Below are positions 9,967-45,018 of a DNA stretch of 64,000 nt, in pieces. Where the stretch lies: the NCBI RefSeq assembly GCF_022045235.1, contig NW_027266271.1, positions 7,316,001-7,380,000 of the forward strand, in the 5' to 3' direction. Under the pieces are notes generated by a model. That model saw only the letters and a list, made by a program, of their open reading frames with translations. It searched no databases and was not told the DNA's origin. Position 1 is the stretch's first letter, and every line of letters begins with the position of its first letter. This DNA is from Haliotis cracherodii. Its lineage: Eukaryota. A program made the translations under genes and the position numbers.

Positions 9967-10722
9967 ATGGGTGGTTGTTCATCTAAAGAGGAAGAGGCGG
10001 GCAAGTACTTGGTGCAGTCTTTGTTCGAACATGAGGCTGGCATCAACTGTATGGCCCTTAGTGAAGACGGATCTGTTCTGGCCACAGGCAGCGAGGACAA
10101 AACAGCAAGGCTATGGAGCACTAGAACGGAGTATTGTGAATGTATCGGCATCCTCCGCGGACACACAGACTACATCAATTGTATCCTTATTGAGGACTGT
10201 TATGTCCTCACCGGAAGTGCAGACAGGTCCATCCGGAAGTGGGATGTCGGAACGTGCGAATGCGTACTTGTGATGCGTGGTCATTGCTCTCTGATCTACC
10301 GTATGATCTGCACCGGAGACTTTGTATTCACCAGCTCGTATGATCGTACCGCCCGATGCTGGGATTTTGATACGGGGGATAATGTACGGGTGTTTCGTGG
10401 CCACAAGAGAGGTGTATACCCTCTCATTTTCATCCCAGCCGATGAGGACGAAATTGCAGACGACCAGGATCTGGATGGAGGTCGGGATATCCTCATCACT
10501 GGGTCGGCTGATTTCACCGCCAGGTCGTGGAACTTCGATACCGGATGTTGCTTGAAGATGTTCAAGGGGCACCGAGGGGCCGTCACGTGCATGAGTGTCG
10601 ACCCAACCGGCCGAGTGCTGTTTACCGGAAGCACAGATTTCACCGTGCGCAGCTGGAATCTATTCAAGGGCACCCAGCTTAAGATGTTCTCGGGCCACCA
10701 GGGGGCTGTCATTTGTATGCAG
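9967..10722 (+). CDS. WDR86: WD40-repeat protein, WDR86-like, coding exon 1 (252 codons)
   Basis: ATG with in-frame TAA 9 nt upstream; consecutive GH..WD repeats (TGSEDKTARLW, GHTDYINC..TGSADRSIRKWD, SSYDRTARCWD, GHRGAVTC); CAG|GTATGT donor at 10723, phase 0. Symbol assigned from recalled similarity to WDR86. Confidence 0.9.
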
Positions 10723-10767
10723 GTATGTTACGTTAATGGCTGTGTTGTTTCACTCCTCCTACAGTAA

Positions 10768-11684: not shown

Positions 11685-11830
11685 GAGGTATAGTGAATAG
11701 AGTGTCTGTCCGGAATGGGGAAAATCGAGGGTTCGATCCTCGGCTGCGTCATACCAAACGACGTTAAAAATTACTTGTTGTTACCCTGCCTGGCGCTTGG
11801 CATTAAGGGGCTGAAACAAGGACTAGTCAT
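11685..11830 (+). mobile_element. tRNA-derived SINE family A, 5' part
   Basis: A-box-like GGTATAGTG, B-box GGTTCGATCC, then core GACGTTAAAAAT..TTGTTGTTACCCTGCCTGGCGCTTGGCATTAAGGGG. Confidence 0.7.
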
Positions 11831-12149
11831 CATTCACATTGGACATACTCACATGTTCTCCCCCACACTAACGCACATATTATACTATACATTGGGTATT
11901 GCTTGTTTGGGGGAGTAGTCAATATAGCTTTACTCCCTGGCTTCTGTCTGTTGGGTATTTTCTTATTGACAAATATACATTGTCCCCTGTTTTCATGGCT
12001 TACATACAAAATGTTGAGTAATATTTATAGTGCGTTGTTTACTGAAGAGCACAATACGGATATTCTTCTTGAAACACCATTACAAGTTAGTTTGCAGAGT
12101 TAAAATTATTTTAGTTAATCATAATATCGTGATCTGCTATCAAATCTGA

Positions 12150-15645: not shown

Positions 15646-15769
15646 CTCTTATAGTCCTTACATTCTTACACATGAGTATCGTGTGGATAAAGGTTAATCC
15701 CTAGCTATGTAATATAAGTGACGTATGTTTCTCTCCTCCATATCGGTATATCGTTGTATTCTTGCCCAG

Positions 15770-15905
15770 GTTGTCAACAAGATCATGTACACCGGCAGCT
15801 CCGACCACACCGGACGGTCCTGGGTCACTGAGTTCGGCGACTGCACCCGTGTCTACAGGGGCCACAAGCATACAGTCAGTGTCATCAAGGTGTTCGACGG
15901 CATGG
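15770..15905 (+). CDS. WDR86: WDR86-like coding exon 2 (136 nt, phase 0 to 1)
   Basis: TTCTTGCCCAG acceptor; VVNKIMYTGSSDHTGRSWVTEFGDCTRVYRGHKHTVSVIKVFDGM; G|GTATGT donor. Confidence 0.9.
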
Positions 15906-15979
15906 GTATGTAACCAACTAATTATTATCATCATAAAAGGGGTTTGAAGCTATTTATGGTCGTAACAATAAATTATATT

Positions 15980-16146
15980 NNNNNNNNNNNNNNNNNNNNN
16001 NNNNNNNNNNNNNNNNNNNNNNNNNNNNNNNNNNNNNNNNNNNNNNNNNNNNNNNNNNNNNNNNNNNNNNNNNNNNNNNNNNNNNNNNNNNNNNNNNNNN
16101 NNNNNNNNNNNNNNNNNNNNNNNNNNNNNNNNNNNNNNNNNNNNNN
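15980..16146. other. Assembly gap (167 N) inside intron 2
   Basis: Run of n. Confidence 1.
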
Positions 16147-16310
16147 TACCTAAAGGCGTTAAAATGGTACCTGTTGTTACCTTGCTTGACGTTTGGGATT
16201 ACGGGGATAAAACAAGAACTGGCCATTGTCGGCTCGGAGTCAGTATGATGTGTCTGTGTGGGGTATTCATGTTAAACTGTGGCATGTCTCCTAGATGGGC
16301 TAGCAGTATA
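16147..16310 (+). mobile_element. SINE family A body abutting the gap
   Basis: GGCGTTAAAATGGTACCTGTTGTTACCTTGCTTGACG..GTCGGCTCGGAGTCAGTAT matches 11760-11830 and reverse of 38740-38860. Confidence 0.7.
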
Positions 16311-16508
16311 TTTGGTATCAAGCCTTGAAATTTATTTTACCAAAGGATGTTTTACTGTGCGCATTGACACAAATGATTCACTTTTAAGTTAAATAAAAGA
16401 AGTTTTCAATATGACATATACATTTAAATTTTTAGACTCACTCCATCGATTAGGAATATTATTCATGGGAAGATTGTTCTTTAAATAATCTGAAAAATTG
16501 TTTTCCAG

Positions 16509-16612
16509 TTTACACAGCTTGTGGCGACTCTGTGTGTCGATGCTATGACGCCAAGAGTGGTGCCTTAAAACGGGAATTTCTCGCTCACGAGAGTACCGTC
16601 ACAGCTTTGCAG
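16509..16612 (+). CDS. WDR86: WDR86-like coding exon 3a (104 nt, phase 1 to 0); absent from the ORF track
   Basis: TTTTCCAG acceptor; (V)YTACGDSVCRCYDAKSGALKREFLAHESTVTALQ; CAG|GTCATT donor; joins exons 2 and 4 in frame. Confidence 0.85.
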
Positions 16613-17602
16613 GTCATTGCTATAGCCATGATATAACTGTGTGGCTTGTAGAATCTCTTCATCTATAGACCTTTTCTGTCTACTTACATATATACCTCGT
16701 TGTGTGGTGTGCTATTATTGTGACTGTCAGAACAGGCCCTTATAATTATATATTGTGAGTTTGTATACTCACATTTTGTATAACTAAATAGTGTGTGAAT
16801 ATACCATTAGACTAACATTTAGTCCCAGACATAAAGTTACCTTATTTAAACATATTCATATGAAAACAAAAAAGTAAATTCCAAATGGAGACCAGAACAA
16901 TTCTTAATTTCAGCCGAGAACTGAGGCAATATAGACTTGCCAAATCATTCTGGAATTGAGTTTGATTCTTTTCTTAAATGCATTCTCTAGGGTCTGGAGA
17001 CTAACATACCATACGCACAGTGAGCTACCAAATTGTGTAGCCCTTACCTGTAAGTACCACAGTAAATGCCATAGAGATCAGAAAACGTAAAAGCCCCCAT
17101 GAAAGGTATGTTTGATAAAGTGATGAAAGATGGATATTTGATTGGGTTGCAATATACAACTTCTGGTCGGTAGTAATCCTAAATGGTTTTGTTTTGACAG
17201 TCACGTAGTCTATTTCACTGTTTGGGTGGTTCTGCTGTGTTTTTAGCATGTGACTTTTCTCGTTACGTCATGTGTTACCTGTTAGTAATGACAAGAATGA
17301 CATGTTCGATCTTATGATTTGGAATAACAGTTCTAAATGCAATGTTTTAGTATTGAATATTACATCCAAACAAACGGGCTCACTGCAACATTGTTCACAA
17401 GATGTGCAACTGAACATGCGGTTGTCTATTGCATCAGTGCTTAGATGTACTTTCACGAAATAGTTCAAGATGTATAATAGAGATATACACACCTGTGTAT
17501 TGCATCTGACGTGTGTTCCATGTATATATGTGTTCCATCAATGTTGTGCTTCGTTGTCTTTCATCATCTCTACCTGTAGCATTTTCTTCTGTTCCCTCAA
17601 AG

Positions 17603-17706
17603 TGTTTACCGGCGCCGGAGATTGTCTAGTTGGGTGTTTTGATCTGAAATCTGCCACACTGAAGCGGTTTTATAATGGCCATGAATTCGCTGTCACTGGT
17701 ATTGAG
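17603..17706 (+). CDS. WDR86: WDR86-like alternative coding exon 3b (104 nt, phase 1 to 0)
   Basis: Pyrimidine tract ending CCCTCAAAG acceptor; (V)FTGAGDCLVGCFDLKSATLKRFYNGHEFAVTGIE; GAG|GTTAGC donor; ungapped homolog of 3a. Confidence 0.8.
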
Positions 17707-18871
17707 GTTAGCCCTGGATGCAGCATGTTTTTACATGATACCCAATGATTATCCCCCTTTAGAGCACGTGATCACATTAAGGCAATCCTTACCTTCTCTT
17801 CCGACGTAACGTAAACGCATGTTTTATTCAAAGCAATACACGAGTAAATATGAAGTTCACATAATTCCCTTTCCAAAACCTTTATATGAACACCTGTTTA
17901 TTGTTTCAAAATGCAATTACCTCACATTTCGATACTAAATACTTAATGCCAGCATGCGACCACTGTATTTGACAATTTTTCTATTTTCTTTGAAATCCCG
18001 ACCTCCATATGGAATTAACGTCAAACTGTTCACTGAAAGTATCATCATGGTTATTATTATCCATTTACAAACTGTAAACTGATTCTTTCTGCAAAGTAAC
18101 GAACGTTGACAGTATAATTGGTTTATGTGTTACGGCCGGGAAATTTGGATATAATATGTAATGTAATATCAAGGATAAACTGATATTCTGTAATGTGATG
18201 AAAAAGAAATTGTTCTGTATGTTTCGTACGTAGCAAATCTCAGTAAGGTGCTTGCCTATTATGGACATTTTTCAAGTTGTTTTATTGATCACGTTGACAC
18301 TTTGAGCACAGAACCTACAGATGTAGCATCTTCATGCGAGTATTCTCATCTATATCCATTCGACTATCGTATGTTTTTCATATCTCATCTGCATGTTCAT
18401 TGGGAAGAATGTGCATCTGAAATATTGCATTCCACGTGATAAATTCATTTGTAATTTTTAGAAAAGCGATCTGTATTAATTAATTTTTCTGAATATAGAA
18501 AACATAATGTAACAACTTCCTGTACAAAACGGTGTAACATGTTATGCTTAATATCAGTGCTATGTACTATTAGTGAGTGAGTGAGTGAATATTTGTAGTC
18601 ACATCGGCAATATCTCAGCCATATCGTGACTAAATCAAGTTAGACACTATATACTATTAATCCATTCATATGTAGTATGACTGAGATATTTAGTTCATGC
18701 GACGTTACAGTTAAACTCCAACACTCATCGTCTAAAGTTCATTATACAATGGAATGGTATTTCTTTGTAAATTATAAAATAACAGATCATTTAAACATTT
18801 TAACTGTAACAAGTTAGCAGAGTTGTTTTTCAATCAACATTTACCTGACCTGGGCTGATGATTATTTTAAG

Positions 18872-19084
18872 GTTGTTGACGGGCGCCTGTTCACGGCATC
18901 GTATGACGGCAGTCTGAAGGTCTGGGACGCTACTGGGATCAAGGATGACACGACCTTCGGCAAAGACGATGACAAGGACAAAGACAAGATGCGAGAGGTG
19001 GAGAAATATGGGGGTTTCGAGCAGCCACAAGTGGACAACAACCAAAACGGGATTCATCAGGACCAGAAGATTATGATTGAATAA
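18872..19084 (+). CDS. WDR86: WDR86-like terminal coding exon (70 aa + stop); absent from the ORF track
   Basis: TTATTTTAAG acceptor; VVDGRLFTASYDGSLKVWDATGIKDDTTFGKDDDKDKDKMREVEKYGGFEQPQVDNNQNGIHQDQKIMIE*. Confidence 0.9.
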   Translation, partial: VVDGRLFTASYDGSLKVWDATGIKDDTTFGKDDDKDKDKMREVEKYGGFEQPQVDNNQNGIHQDQKIMIE

Positions 19085-20499
19085 GCAAGTCATATTTGGG
19101 CGTGGTTTGGGATATTTGGCTAGGTCCATGTATACCAATTTGATAGGTTTGTTAATGATGAAGGCGCTTTATTTGTAAACTTACAGTCTGCAACAGTTCA
19201 ACGAATAATTCCTTTGTGTTGCAGGATTTGATGTTAACGTATATATCAAGCAAACGTAATGCACTACACCATACAAACTGCGAAAGTAAGAACACTTGGC
19301 GCATTAAGTACACAAACAAGAATATCAATCAAACCAAATAATGGCAAGTTGTTGTACAGATGCTTTGTACAAACGCAAGCATGGCTTTGCTGTATAAACA
19401 TTATCTTTTGTTGCTGCCTAAAAGATTCACAGTATTCAGGCTTCTGAAATATTTCCAAAAGCAAATAGGCTTATGTTGACGGACGTATTTGAAGGACTGC
19501 AGGAAAACACCATATGGCATCTAGCCAAGGAGTCGTCCCTTTATACATTAATGTCATATGAAATGGGATAACTACTGATGACATGGCACTGGGTAGCTTA
19601 CCGAGGGATGTTTCACGAATGATGTCTTTCACAAAATTCTATATTTTCACACGTTTGAACACGCACTTTGTTAGATACAGAACAGACGTTGTAAATATGT
19701 GTTGTCGTCATGTATAATGTTATTGATTGTAAATAACTCATATCCGATGTGGGACAGGTTTATATTTGTCCAAAGAGAGTGTTAAGTATAATATAAATCG
19801 AAACGATTGACTTCATTTTGGTTTAAAGGATTAACTGATTTTGAAGAAAGGTATATTCGAAGTCACTAGGAAAGGCAGAAACAAGTTTGATTCATTTGAA
19901 TTCGTATTTAAGATTTGAGAAATGCTTTCCGTGACCTACATTCATTATCCCTCAATTTCAAGTATAAGAATAGTAGTGATGCTTTGTATGATGGGTAGAC
20001 TATAGCGGGTTTTTTTTCATTTGAATGTCCTAGCTGATCTACGTACAATCGTTTACTGCTGATTTTCAACATTTACTAGTTGTCTTTTTTCGTTTGTTAT
20101 TTTTAGAGAGTTTTAAAATCTCTTTTTGTCTCAACTGCTGCACGCCATCCTGGACGTAACTGCTGATATATGGCGGACGTAGACAACTCATTGTTTGAAC
20201 ACTTGTCGACTTATTTTATCCTTTCAATGCTCACTAATTTTAAAGTTTTCAATTCGAAATATTTTTTAATTGAAAATAAAGTAAAGGGTATGAGCATCCT
20301 TTTTTAAGGTAACGTCAGCTTTAATGGAATATGACAACACTGCTTATATTTACAATAGTTATTTGCAAAATGTACCTCTGCACAGACTTCACATTGTATC
20401 AGACAATTATTTTATTAGATGAACAATTCCAAACAAATGTTAATTGTGTTTAACATATTTAACATTTAATTAGTTAAAATCTGCGGTTGGTTGAAAATA

Positions 20500-37212: not shown

Positions 37213-38021
37213 GACCTATTCTGTCATGGACTATTCACAGGGAGACACGCACGGGGTAATCTAGACCTATTCAATCATGGACTATTCACAGGGAAACACG
37301 CACGGGGTAATGTAGACGTATTCCATCATGGACTGTTCACAGGGAGACACGCACGGGGTAATGTAGACCTATTCCATCAAGGACTACTCACAGGGAGACA
37401 CGCACGGGGTAATGTAGGCCTATTCTGTCATGGACAGTTCACAGGGAGACACACACGGGGTAATGTAGACCTATTCTGTCATGGACCATTCACAGGGAGA
37501 CACGCACGGGATAATGTAGACCTATTCTGTCATGGACTATTCACAGGGAGACACACACGGGGTAATGTAGACCTATTCTGTCATGGACTATTCACAGGGA
37601 GACACGCACGGGATAATGTAGACCTATTCTGTCATGGACTATTCACAGGGAGACACACACGGGGTAATGTAGACCTATTCTGTCATGGACTATTCACAGG
37701 GAGACACGCACGGGATAATGTAGACCTATTCTGTCATGGACTATTCACAGGGAGACACGCACGGGGTAATGTAGACCTATTCTGTCATGGACTATTCACA
37801 GGGAGACACGCACGGGGTAATGTAGACCTATTCTGTCATGGACTATTCACAGGGAGACACGCACGGGGTAATGTAGACCTATTCTGTCATGGACTATTCA
37901 CAGGGAGACACGCACGGGGTAATGTAGACCTATTCTGTCATGGACTATTCACAGGGAGACACGCACGGGGTAATGTAGACCTATTCTTTCATGGACTTTT
38001 CCCAGGGAGACACGCACGGGA
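37213..38021. repeat. 51-bp minisatellite, ~16 copies
   Basis: Unit GACCTATTCTGTCATGGACTATTCACAGGGAGACACGCACGGGGTAATGTA. Confidence 0.95.
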
Positions 38022-39619: not shown

Positions 39620-42550
39620 CTCCCTCCTACCAACCCCCTCTCTCCATCCCTACCTCCTCCTACCTCCCTACCTCTTTACCACTTCTCCCATTCTCCTTCC
39701 ACCCCCGCCCCCACCCTCCACCCCTCCCTCTCCTACACCCCCTCCTCTCCCTCCACCAGTCCAGCTCTTCCTTGCATCCTCTCCCTCTCCTCCATCCAAC
39801 CCCCCCTATCCTCGATTCCACCCCCTCCCCCTACTCCAATCCACCCCCTCCATCTCCTCTATTCCACTCCCCCCTCTCCTCCATTTCACCCCTTCCTCTC
39901 CTCGATTCCACCCCTTCTCTCCTCTATTCCAAGCCCTCCCTCTCCTCCATTCCACCTTCCCCCTTCTCCATTCCACCTTCTACCTCTCCTCCATTCCTAT
40001 CATCCCTCTCCTCCATTCCACCCCCTCCCTCTCCTCCATTCCATATCATCCCTCTCCTCCATTCCACCCCCTCCCTCTCCTCCATTCCACCCCCTCCCAC
40101 TCCTCCATTCCACCTTCTACCTCTCCTCCATTCCACCTTCTACCTCTCCTCCATTCCACCTTCTACCTTTCCTCCATTCCATATCATCCCTCTCCTCCAT
40201 TCCACCCCCTCCCTCTCCTCCATTCCATATCATCCCTCTCCTCCATTCCACCCCCTCCCTTTCCTCCATTCCACCCCTCCCTCTCCTCCATTCCACCCCC
40301 TCCCACTCCTCCATTCCACCTTCTACCTCTCCTCCATTCCACCTTCTACCTTTCCTCCATTCCATATCATACCTCTCCTCCATTCCACCCCTTCTACCTC
40401 TCCTCCATTCCACCTTCTACCTCTCCTCCATTCCACCTTCTACCTTTCCTCCATTCCATATCATCCCTCTCCTCCATTCCACCTTCTACCTCTCCTCCAT
40501 TCCACCTTCTACCTCTCCTCCATTCCACCTTCTGTCTTTCCTCCATTCCATATCATCCCTCTCCTCCATTCCACCTCATCCCACTCCTCCATTCCACCCC
40601 TCCCTCTCCTCCATTCCACCCCTCCCACTCCTCCATTCCACCCCTCCCACTCCTCCATTCCACCTCATCCCGCTCCTCCATTCCACCTCATCCCGCTCCT
40701 CCATTCCACCTCATCCCACTCCTCCATTCCACCCCTCCCACTCCTCCATTCCACCTCATCCCGCTCCTCCATTCCACCTCATCCCGCTCCTCCATTCCAC
40801 CTCATCCCACTCCTCCATTCCACCCCTCCCACTCCTCCATTCCACCTCATCCCACTCCTCCATTCCACCCCTCCCTCTCCTCCATTCCACCCCTCCCACT
40901 CCTCCATTCCACCCCTCCCACTCCTCCATTCCACCTCATCCCACTCCTCCATTCCACCCCTCCCACTCCTCCATTCCACCTCATCCCACTCCTCCATTCC
41001 ACCCCTCCCTCTCCTCCATTCCACCCCTCCCACTCCTCCATTCCACCCCTCCCACTCCTCCATTCCACCTCATCCCGCTCCTCCATTCCACCTCATCCCG
41101 CTCCTCCATTCCACCTCATCCCACTCCTCCATTCCACCCCTCCCACTCCTCCATTCCACCTCATCCCGCTCCTCCATTCCACCTCATCCCGCTCCTCCAT
41201 TCCACCTCATCCCACTCCTCCATTCCACCCCTCCCACTCCTCCATTCCACCTCATCCCACTCCTCCATTCCACCCCTCCCTCTCCTCCATTCCACCCCTC
41301 CCACTCCTCCATTCCACCCCTCCCACTCCTCCATTCCACCCCTCCCACTCCTCCATTCCACCTCATCCCACTCCTCCATTCCACCTCATCCCGCTCCTCC
41401 ATTCCACCTCATCCCACTCCTCCATTCCACCCCTCCCACTCCTCCATTCCACCTCATCCCGCTCCTCCATTCCACCTCATCCCACTCCTCCATTCCACCT
41501 CTCCCACTCCTCCATTCCACCTCATCCCACTCCTCCATTCCACCTCATCCCGCTCCTCCATTCCACCTCTCCCACTCCTCCATTCCACCTCTCCCACTCC
41601 TCCATTCCACCCCTCCCACTCCTCCATTCCACCTCATCCCGCTCCTCCATTCCACCTCATCCCACTCCTCCATTCCACCCCTCCCACTCCTCCATTCCAC
41701 CTCATCCCGCTCCTCCATTCCACCTCATCCCACTCCTCCATTCCACCCCTCCCACTCCTCCATTCCACCTCATCCCGCTCCTCCATTCCACCTCATCCCA
41801 CTCCTCCATTCCACCCCTCCCACTCCTCCATTCCACCTCATCCCGCTCCTCCATTCCACCTCATCCCACTCCTCCATTCCACCCCTCCCACTCCTCCATT
41901 CCACCTCATCCCGCTCCTCCATTCCACCTCATCCCACTCCTCCATTCCACCCCTCCCACTCCTCCATTCCACCTCATCCCGCTCCTCCATTCCACCTCAT
42001 CCCACTCCTCCATTCCACCCCTCCCACTCCTCCATTCCACCTCATCCCGCTCCTCCATTCCACCTCATCCCACTCCTCCATTCCACCTCATCCCACTCCT
42101 CCATTCCACCCCTCCCTCTCCTCCATTCCACCTCATCCCACTCCTCCATTCCATATCATCCTACTCCTCCATTCCACCCCTCCCACTCCTCCATTCCACC
42201 CCTCCCACTGCTCCATTTCACCCCTACCACTCCTCCATTCCACCCCCTCCCACTCCTCGATTTCACCCCTCCCTCTCCTCCATTCCACCTCATCCCTTTC
42301 CTCCATTCCACCCCTACCTCTCCTCCATTCCACCACCTCCCTCTCCTCCATTCCAACCAATCTCCTCCATTCCACCCCTTCCTCTCCTCCATTCCACCCC
42401 CTCCCTCTCCTCCATTCCACCTCATCCCTCTTCTCCATTCCAACCCCACCCTCTCCTCCATTCCACCCCCTCACTCTCCTCCAAACCACCCCATCCCTCT
42501 CCTCCATTCCACCTCCTCCCTCTCCTCCATTCCACCTCCCTCCTCCGCCT
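39620..42550. repeat. ~2.9-kb pyrimidine-rich satellite, 22/23-bp units with CTCCTCCATTCCAC core
   Basis: CTCCTCCATTCCACCCCTCCCA and CTCCTCCATTCCACCTCATCCC(A/G) variants; G almost absent from the + strand. Confidence 0.95.
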
Positions 42551-44111: not shown

Positions 44112-45018
44112 TGCTACCAGTACCCCTCCCACTACAACTACAACTACCACTACAACTACAATTACAACTACAACTGCAACTACAATTACAACTACCACTA
44201 CAAATACCACTACCACTACCACTACAAGTACAAGTAACACTACCACTACCACTACCCCTACCCCTACCACTACCACTTACCACTTCAATTACAACTACCA
44301 TCACCACCACCATCACCACCACCATCACCACTACCACCACCACCACCACCACTACCACTACCACCACCACTACCAACACAACCGCCACCACCACTATCAC
44401 TACCACTACCACTAACCTTACCCTGACCCTACCACTACCACTACAACTATAACTACCATCACCACCATCAACACTACTACCACTACCACCCCTACCACAA
44501 CCACTACCACCAACACCAACACCACTACCACTACCATCCCCACCATCAATACTACCACCACTACCAACCCTATCACTACCAATACCACCAACACCAACAC
44601 CAACACCAACACCAACACCAACACCACTACCACTACCACCATCACCACTACCACCATCCCGACACCACAACCACTATCATCACTACCACCACGACCACTA
44701 CCACCACCACTACCACTACCACCACTACTACCACCACTACCACCATCACCACTACCACCACCACACTACCAACACCACTACCAACACCACTACCACCAAC
44801 ACTACCACCAACACTACCACTACCACCACTACCACCATCACCACTACCACCACCACACTACCAACACCACTACCAACACCACTACCACCAACACTACCCC
44901 CACTACCATCAACACTACCATCACATCACCACCATCGACACCACCACCACTACCGCCACCGCCACCACCACCACTGCTATCACCACCACCACCACTACCA
45001 CTACCACCACCGCTACTA
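44112..45018. repeat. Compound (ACC/ACT/ACA)n low-complexity trinucleotide tract
   Basis: Seen directly; generates poly-T/H/V ORFs. Confidence 0.95.

What the first reader, a model, noticed from the sequence alone, without database searches (positions are those of the whole stretch)
16509..17706. Tandem-duplicated, apparently mutually exclusive exons swap part of the WD40 propeller of the WDR86-like protein
Seen: two 104-nt exons, each with AG/GT sites and phase 1 to 0, align without gaps (VYTACGDSVCRCYDAKSGALKREFLAHESTVTALQ vs VFTGAGDCLVGCFDLKSATLKRFYNGHEFAVTGIE; 15/35 identical). WD40 core positions are kept and neither has a stop. Either one gives a 402-aa protein. Including both reads 3b out of frame (TGT TTA CCG GCG CCG GAG ATT GTC TAG), a premature stop upstream of the last junction and so an NMD candidate. 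Skipping both gives GGT TGT TGA. Established: same-length, same-phase homologous neighbours are the signature of mutually exclusive exons. Inference: high divergence with intact frames implies an old duplication kept by selection, giving two isoforms with different propeller surfaces. I do not know of a description of this for WDR86. The 990-nt spacer is too long for simple steric exclusion unless the branch point is distal.
Basis: partly seen in the sequence, partly recalled or inferred. Interest (0 to 1): 0.85.

Follow-up and report, generated by a model that had tools for sequence, protein, structure and literature searches.

The report
Alternative blade exons in abalone WDR86
An abalone WD40-repeat gene (WDR86-like) has two old tandem copies of one 104-base exon, so it can make two 402-residue proteins differing in one propeller blade; this is a normal kind of alternative splicing, and NCBI's automatic annotation of red abalone already lists the second form.

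Summary
Exons 3a (16509-16612) and 3b (17603-17706) are both 104 nt, both AG/GT-bounded and in the same phase. They align without gaps at 15/35 residues. Either one gives a 402-aa ORF; including both or neither gives an early stop.

The duplication is old and constrained. Only 49/104 bases match, third codon positions are saturated (pS ~1.0, pN 0.38), and the flanking introns do not align. Placing the 55 differences at random gives 15 or more identical residues in 0.025% of trials.

The genome is a Haliotis. In four RNA-derived contig sets, one long contig joins exon 2 > 3a > exon 4. Exon 3b appears only in low-depth unspliced contigs. However, RefSeq XP_048237878.1 (Haliotis rufescens WDR86-like isoform X2, 402 aa) carries the 3b peptide exactly.

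My reading is a true mutually exclusive pair, with 3a major and 3b minor, and exclusivity enforced by the reading frame. I did not see a 3b junction read myself. This is a new member of a known kind, already captured by automatic annotation, and of modest interest.

The parts
9967..10722 (+). Exon 1 of the WDR86-like gene (ATG at 9967, donor CAG|gtatgt), 252 aa, WD repeats 1-6
   Evidence: Sequence. Matches aa 1-252 of P0203 at 99%. Homologues are named WDR86.
15770..15905 (+). Exon 2, 136 nt, ends in phase 1 (TGG|gtatgt)
   Evidence: The junction 15905>16509 appears in the long contig of all four runs. Identical to P0203.
16509..16612 (+). Exon 3a, 104 nt, the major variant. Encodes strands B, C and D of blade 7 and strand A of blade 8.
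   Evidence: Spliced to exon 2 and to the last exon in one long contig (1.3-4.6 kb, depth 23-123) in each of runs X1, X2, X5 and X7.
16613..17602 (+). 990-nt intron between the two variants. No homology to the other flanks, no U12-type sites, no convincing docking or selector pairing.
17603..17706 (+). Exon 3b, 104 nt, the alternative variant with a 17-nt pyrimidine tract before its acceptor. Same phase as 3a.
   Evidence: Peptide is 35/35 identical to residues 298-332 of RefSeq XP_048237878.1 (P0203). Only synonymous changes (17628 A>G, 17659 C>T) in three other coded organism labels (congeners or strains). Seen only unspliced in my four runs.
18872..19084 (+). Last coding exon, with stop TAA at 19082-19084
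   Evidence: Junction 16612>18872 seen in all four runs.

Best explanation
This is a true two-member cluster of mutually exclusive exons in the abalone orthologue of WDR86. It arose by an ancient tandem duplication of a 104-nt exon.

Each mRNA that can be translated to full length carries exactly one copy. 104 is not a multiple of 3, so including both puts a stop 77 nt before the last junction (an NMD candidate), and skipping both puts a stop in the last exon. The reading frame therefore enforces exclusivity at the level of productive mRNA. The 990-nt spacer makes steric exclusion unlikely, and the donors are not U12-type.

3a is the predominant form. 3b is a minor or condition-specific form. 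The swapped 35 residues form three strands of blade 7 and the first strand of blade 8 of an eight-bladed propeller, together with their connecting loops. The two isoforms therefore keep the fold but differ in 20 of 35 residues of one sector.

Shown: exon anatomy, age and constraint, the 3a junctions, and the existence of an annotated 3b isoform in a congener.

Inferred: that 3b is really spliced in vivo, that the frame plus NMD is the enforcing mechanism, and that the two surfaces differ in partner binding.
For: Anatomy and frames.

Homology beyond chance: E 1.9e-7, unique in both window and genome.

Old duplication with purifying selection on both copies:
- 49/104 nt identical. Differences by codon position are 14/15/26. 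pS ~1.0 against pN 0.38.
- Random placement of 55 differences gives a mean of 7.3/35 identical residues, and 15 or more in 0.00025 of trials.
- The flanking introns do not align.
- 3b keeps T300, G301, G303, D304, S314, R319 and H324, which are invariant or nearly invariant across 28 WDR86 proteins.

Recent constraint: the 3b peptide is identical in H. rufescens. The only two 3b changes in three other coded organism labels (congeners or strains) are synonymous, while the flanking intron differs at about 3.7%.

Expression: the 3a isoform is spliced in four runs. The 3b isoform is annotated as XP_048237878.1 isoform X2, 402 aa. In runs X5 and X7 the only contigs on unique intron sequence lie over exon 3b. 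This is a weak hint of extra coverage there.

Fold: the 3b isoform models as a complete 32-strand propeller with pLDDT 94-97 over residues 291-350.

Other molluscs:
- Two unionid proteins are 97% identical in exon 1 but share only 18/35 residues in this exon.
- A Nucella model has a chimeric 43-aa segment that looks built from two copies.
- Both suggest that other molluscs also have two copies.
Against: None of the four contig sets holds a joint 15905>17603 or 17706>18872. Every contig over 3b runs colinear with the genome across both of its splice sites, at depth 2.9-5.3, against 23-123 for the 3a mRNA.

I could not inspect the evidence behind the RefSeq X2 model, and I could not retrieve isoform X1.

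3b is a long branch (1.47 against 0.24 for 3a) and has lost the otherwise near-universal Arg of strand C. This could mean relaxed constraint.

The paralogue in the same genome has only one copy.
Confidence: 0.72

Rival explanations
1. 3b is a once-functional duplicate exon that is no longer used, or is used at noise level. The RefSeq isoform X2 would then be a model built on weak evidence.
For: No 3b junction in four runs, only unspliced coverage. 3b is the fast-evolving copy and lacks the conserved strand-C Arg. Its acceptor is AAG rather than CAG or TAG.
Against: No stop, no indel and intact AG/GT, even though synonymous sites are saturated. The peptide is identical in H. rufescens and only synonymous changes occur in three other coded organism labels (congeners or strains). 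An isoform with this exon is annotated independently. From my own knowledge, not checked here, Gnomon normally emits extra isoforms only where alignments support them.
Confidence: 0.16
2. 3b acts mainly as a regulatory 'poison' exon. It would be included after 3a to shift the frame and send the mRNA to NMD, tuning WDR86 level rather than making a second protein.
For: Joint inclusion gives a stop 77 nt upstream of the last junction. 3b-containing RNA is rare in steady-state contigs, as expected for NMD substrates.
Against: A poison exon needs no conserved WD40 reading frame in the phase used when it replaces 3a. 3b keeps exactly that frame, the family's invariant residues and only synonymous variation. 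No 16612>17603 joint was seen.
Confidence: 0.08
3. The similarity is a chance WD40-like open frame in an intron, not a duplicate exon.
For: WD repeats are common and 34 codons stay open by chance about a quarter of the time.
Against: The full-length gapless match at E 1.9e-7 is much better than to any other repeat of the same protein. Length, phase and splice sites are identical. The peptide matches an annotated protein exactly.
Confidence: 0.01

Closest known systems
Clusters of mutually exclusive exons born by tandem exon duplication (criteria of Pillmann et al. 2011, PMC3228551; human survey of Hatje et al. 2017, PMC5740500)
   Same: The two exons are neighbours with equal length, the same phase, the same splice-site type and homologous peptides that encode the same structural element. 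As in 60% of human clusters, the exon length is not divisible by three, so joint inclusion shifts the frame (PMC5740500).
   Different: No bridging junction reads for the second member were seen here. The gene (WDR86) and the swapped element (a WD40 blade) are not among the cases in the papers I searched.
RefSeq XP_048237878.1, WD repeat-containing protein 86-like isoform X2 [Haliotis rufescens] (P0203)
   Same: 402 aa. It maps exon by exon onto the window and uses 17603-17706. It is identical in exons 2, 3b and 4 and differs at 2 residues in exon 1.
   Different: It comes from another abalone species or individual. It is an automatic model whose supporting evidence I could not see. Its sister isoform X1, presumably the 3a form, was not retrievable.
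WDR86 of other animals (single exon-3 version in the annelid, nemertean, bryozoan, rotifer, arthropod, amphioxus and vertebrate proteins)
   Same: Exon 1 is 42-76% identical. The same 35-residue segment sits between conserved flanks. WD40 Pfam matches were found.
   Different: Those proteins show one version of the segment. Only mollusc entries hint at two: Haliotis, Unionidae and Nucella. The function of WDR86 is, to my knowledge, uncharacterised.
Competing-RNA-structure or steric MXE systems (Dscam, tropomyosin), as reviewed in PMC5740500
   Same: The outcome is the same: one exon of a pair per mRNA.
   Different: The spacer is 990 nt, too long for donor-to-branch-point interference. The inverted repeats in the introns are short, AT-rich and unremarkable. 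The donors are not U12-type.

Membership tests
Mutually exclusive exon cluster (sequence criteria, PMC3228551) | About the same length | tested here: met
   104 nt against 104 nt
Mutually exclusive exon cluster (sequence criteria, PMC3228551) | Compatible splice-site pattern and the same reading frame, with no in-frame stop | tested here: met
   Both AG...GT, both phase 1 to 0, both open
Mutually exclusive exon cluster (sequence criteria, PMC3228551) | Peptide similarity (relative BLOSUM62 score at least 0.15) | tested here: met
   Relative score 0.44, 15/35 identical, E 1.9e-7 in the window
Mutually exclusive exon cluster (RNA validation, PMC5740500) | Junction reads from each member to the flanking exons, bridging the other member | tested here: inconclusive
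   3a: both junctions in 4 of 4 runs. 3b: none in these contig sets, which drop minor variants. A 3b isoform is annotated in H. rufescens, but its read support could not be seen.
Mutually exclusive exon cluster (RNA validation, PMC5740500) | No reads joining the two members, unless joint inclusion shifts the frame | tested here: met
   No 16612>17603 joint. Joint inclusion would in any case shift the frame.
WDR86 orthologue group | Best full-length relatives are WDR86 proteins, with co-linear WD40 repeats | tested here: met
   named hits from molluscs to mammals; alignment; PF00400, 158 bits; 8-bladed model

The most novel reading that the evidence does not exclude
The exon pair predates the split of gastropods and bivalves. 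It would then be a conserved molluscan switch that exchanges one blade sector of the WDR86 propeller, with a canonical copy (3a, Sinanodonta type) and a fast-evolving copy (3b, possibly Potamilus type) that give the protein two partner specificities in different tissues or stages.
Probability: 0.3. Interest if true: 0.45.

Novelty: new member of a known kind. Interest (0 to 1): 0.3.

Why it matters
WDR86 has no known function. A conserved switch confined to one sector of its propeller would show where its partners bind and give a natural pair of variants to compare.

More broadly, this adds a clean example of a WD40 blade exchanged by mutually exclusive splicing. It also shows that contig-level RNA data can hide the minor member of an equal-length exon pair. 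The case is otherwise an ordinary product of tandem exon duplication and is already captured by automatic annotation.

Tried and rejected
I could not fetch the WDR86 loci of Potamilus, Sinanodonta, Nucella or Octopus to look for both copies.
- A region search with the Sinanodonta exon found only the two unionid proteins.
- A search with the 94-aa open frame around 3b found nothing.
- phmmer of the 3b peptide against 1.84 billion representatives was dominated by generic multi-repeat WD40 proteins. The one close short hit, P0181, is from an unrelated lineage with a single, intron-less version.
- The exon tree on 35 columns is unresolved. Only 3a plus Sinanodonta got moderate support (88/78), so orthology of the b copies cannot be claimed.
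- Inverted repeats in the introns gave no credible docking or selector pair.
- The paralogue on the same chromosome has a single exon-3 homologue.
- Paper searches for WDR86 with mutually exclusive splicing or with Haliotis found nothing relevant.
- Octopus isoforms X1 and X2 differ by other events, not by this exon.
I repeated it by extracting the segments from the stored proteins.
Joining was done only inside scripts, to count codons and locate stops. The 3b isoform was folded from the database protein P0203. The 3a isoform was not folded.
- The N run 15980-16146 was left as it is.

Full report
**What is there**

The + strand of the window carries a four-coding-exon gene:
- exon 1, 9967-10722 (252 aa, six WD repeats)
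- exon 2, 15770-15905
- one of two 104-nt exons, 3a (16509-16612) or 3b (17603-17706)
- the last exon, 18872-19084

I first took exon 1 to end at 10731. The donor is in fact CAG|gtatgt at 10722/10723, as the mapping of P0203 shows.

Both alternative exons follow an AG and precede a GT. Both start in phase 1 after the G at 15905 and end in phase 0.

With either exon the CDS is 1209 nt, or 402 aa. With both, the frame shifts and stops at codon 341, 77 nt before the 3b donor. With neither, it stops at codon 300 in the last exon.

**Is it more than chance?**

The two peptides align end to end without gaps, with 15/35 identical and a BLOSUM62 score of 82. That is 44% of the self-score, against the 15% threshold of the published predictor (PMC3228551).

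tblastn of 3a against the window finds 3b at E 1.9e-7. The other WD repeats of the same gene reach only 0.003-0.05. In the whole 1.18-Gb assembly, 3b's only relative is 3a.

**Age and selection**

Only 49 of 104 bases agree. The differences fall 14/15/26 on codon positions 1/2/3. The synonymous proportion is about 1.0 (saturated) while the non-synonymous proportion is 0.38. Fifty bases of flanking intron on each side do not align.

If the 55 differences are placed at random on 3a, the mean identity is 7.3/35. Fifteen or more identities occur in 0.025% of 20,000 trials, and a score of 82 never occurs.

3b retains the residues that are invariant or nearly invariant in 28 WDR86 proteins: T300, G301, G303, D304, S314, R319 and H324. 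Both copies have therefore been read as protein for most of the time since a very old duplication.

For recent constraint, the 3b peptide is identical in Haliotis rufescens. In contigs from three other coded organism labels (congeners or strains), the only changes inside 3b (17628 A>G, 17659 C>T) are synonymous. The adjoining intron differs at about 3.7% (12 of 323 positions in run X2). This last test is weak, with P near 0.05.

**Whose genome**

A Haliotis rubra WDR86-like protein (P0079) matches a paralogue on the same contig at 93%. The 90% cluster of the exon-1 fragment P0001 also contains a Haliotis rufescens RefSeq protein. The window differs from H. rufescens at two residues of exon 1, so it is another Haliotis species or individual.

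**RNA evidence**

I laid the Logan contigs of four runs on 15650-19250. The runs are only guessed to be RNA. However, each has one long contig (1.3-4.6 kb, depth 23-123) in which 15905 is joined to 16509 and 16612 to 18872, with GT..AG removed. They are therefore RNA-derived, and the 3a isoform is real.

No run shows a joint into or out of 3b, and none shows a 3a-3b joint. 3b is covered in three runs, but by low-depth contigs (2.9-5.3) that run colinear with the genome across both of its splice sites: 17441-17867, 17482-17749 and 17596-17859.

This does not show that 3b is unused. The tool itself warns that contigs drop rare variants. A minor path of the same length between the same two exons is the kind of branch an assembler may collapse.

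In X5 and X7 the only contigs on unique intron sequence are the ones over 3b. This hints at extra coverage there, but nothing more.

**Independent annotation**

The decisive lead came from the cluster look-up. P0203 is XP_048237878.1, 'WD repeat-containing protein 86-like isoform X2 [Haliotis rufescens]', 402 aa.

Its residues 298-332 are exactly the 3b peptide. tblastn maps it to exon 1, exon 2, 17602-17706 and the last exon of the window, skipping 3a. The 3b isoform is therefore already in a public automatic annotation of a congener.

From my own knowledge, not checked here, NCBI's Gnomon pipeline emits additional isoforms where transcript alignments support them. I could not see the evidence line of this record, and isoform X1 was not retrievable.

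**Structure**

P0203 was folded with an alignment of 28 WDR86 proteins. It gives a confident model (mean pLDDT 85.6; 94-97 over residues 291-350) with 32 strands, that is eight four-stranded blades.

The alternative exon covers strands 297-302, 306-311 and 317-322 and the start of strand 328-334. These are three strands of blade 7 and the first strand of blade 8, with the loops between them.

The two versions differ at 20 of 35 positions. The differences include Arg to Gly in the second of these strands, Glu to Phe and Leu to Asn in the third, and Ser to Phe in the loop after the His. The 3a isoform was not folded, because joined exon models were not to be sent to tools.

**Other species**

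All non-mollusc WDR86 proteins in hand show a single 35-residue version between the conserved flanks.

Among molluscs there are hints of two copies:
- The two unionid proteins are 97% identical in exon 1 yet share only 18/35 residues here.
- The Sinanodonta model also lacks exon 2, so it looks like a gene prediction that picked the other copy.
- A Nucella model has a 43-residue chimera that looks assembled from two copies.

The 35-column tree groups 3a with the Sinanodonta version (88/78). It leaves 3b (branch 1.47) and the Potamilus version (0.98) unresolved. An origin before the gastropod-bivalve split is therefore possible but not shown. The abalone paralogue has a single copy.

**Mechanism**

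The donors are ordinary U2-type. The spacer is 990 nt, which makes donor-to-branch-point interference implausible (compare PMC5740500). The intronic inverted repeats are short and AT-rich.

The remaining mechanism is the commonest one in the human survey. The exon length is not divisible by three, so only single-inclusion mRNAs are productive and the double-inclusion mRNA is an NMD candidate (PMC5740500). Whether the choice is also regulated by splicing factors is unknown.

**Verdict**

The independent RefSeq isoform and the strong evolutionary constraint make a real, minor 3b isoform the best reading, at about 0.72.

The main rival is a recently silenced exon, at about 0.16. A poison-exon role is at about 0.08.

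This is a new member of a well-known kind, already captured by automatic annotation though not described in the papers searched. Interest is modest.

Noticed in passing
window 39781-42539: A 2.8-kb C-rich tandem array (23-bp unit, about 122 copies, 88% matches) explains the extreme GC skew of -0.97 at 40-42 kb. Two further arrays lie at 37213-38020 (51 bp x 15.8) and 44114-45016 (6/12 bp).
   Followed up: partly
window 16147-16375, 16739-16980 and 18554-18674: Intronic repeats are covered at word depths of hundreds to over 20,000 in all four RNA runs, with many loose ends. They are abundant transcribed interspersed repeats. Going by the translated frames, a related copy seems to lie near 11697-11915. 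The first repeat abuts the N run 15980-16146.
   Followed up: no
G000:C8:661153-696257 (loci L005, L007-L010): A WDR86-like paralogue lies 6.6 Mb away on the same contig. It is 93% identical to a Haliotis rubra RefSeq protein and 56% identical to this gene in exon 1. It has a single exon-3 homologue. One TGA lies inside the extended exon-1 match.
   Followed up: partly
P0009 (Sinanodonta woodiana) and P0023 (Nucella lapillus): Both public models look mis-built at this exon. P0009 lacks exon 2 and uses a different exon-3 version from its close relative Potamilus. P0023 has a 43-aa chimeric segment. Both are the errors one would expect a gene predictor to make at a frame-shifting exon pair.
   Followed up: partly
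window 19156: Two of the three other coded organism labels (runs X2 and X7) carry a 23-nt insertion in the 3' UTR relative to the window.
   Followed up: no
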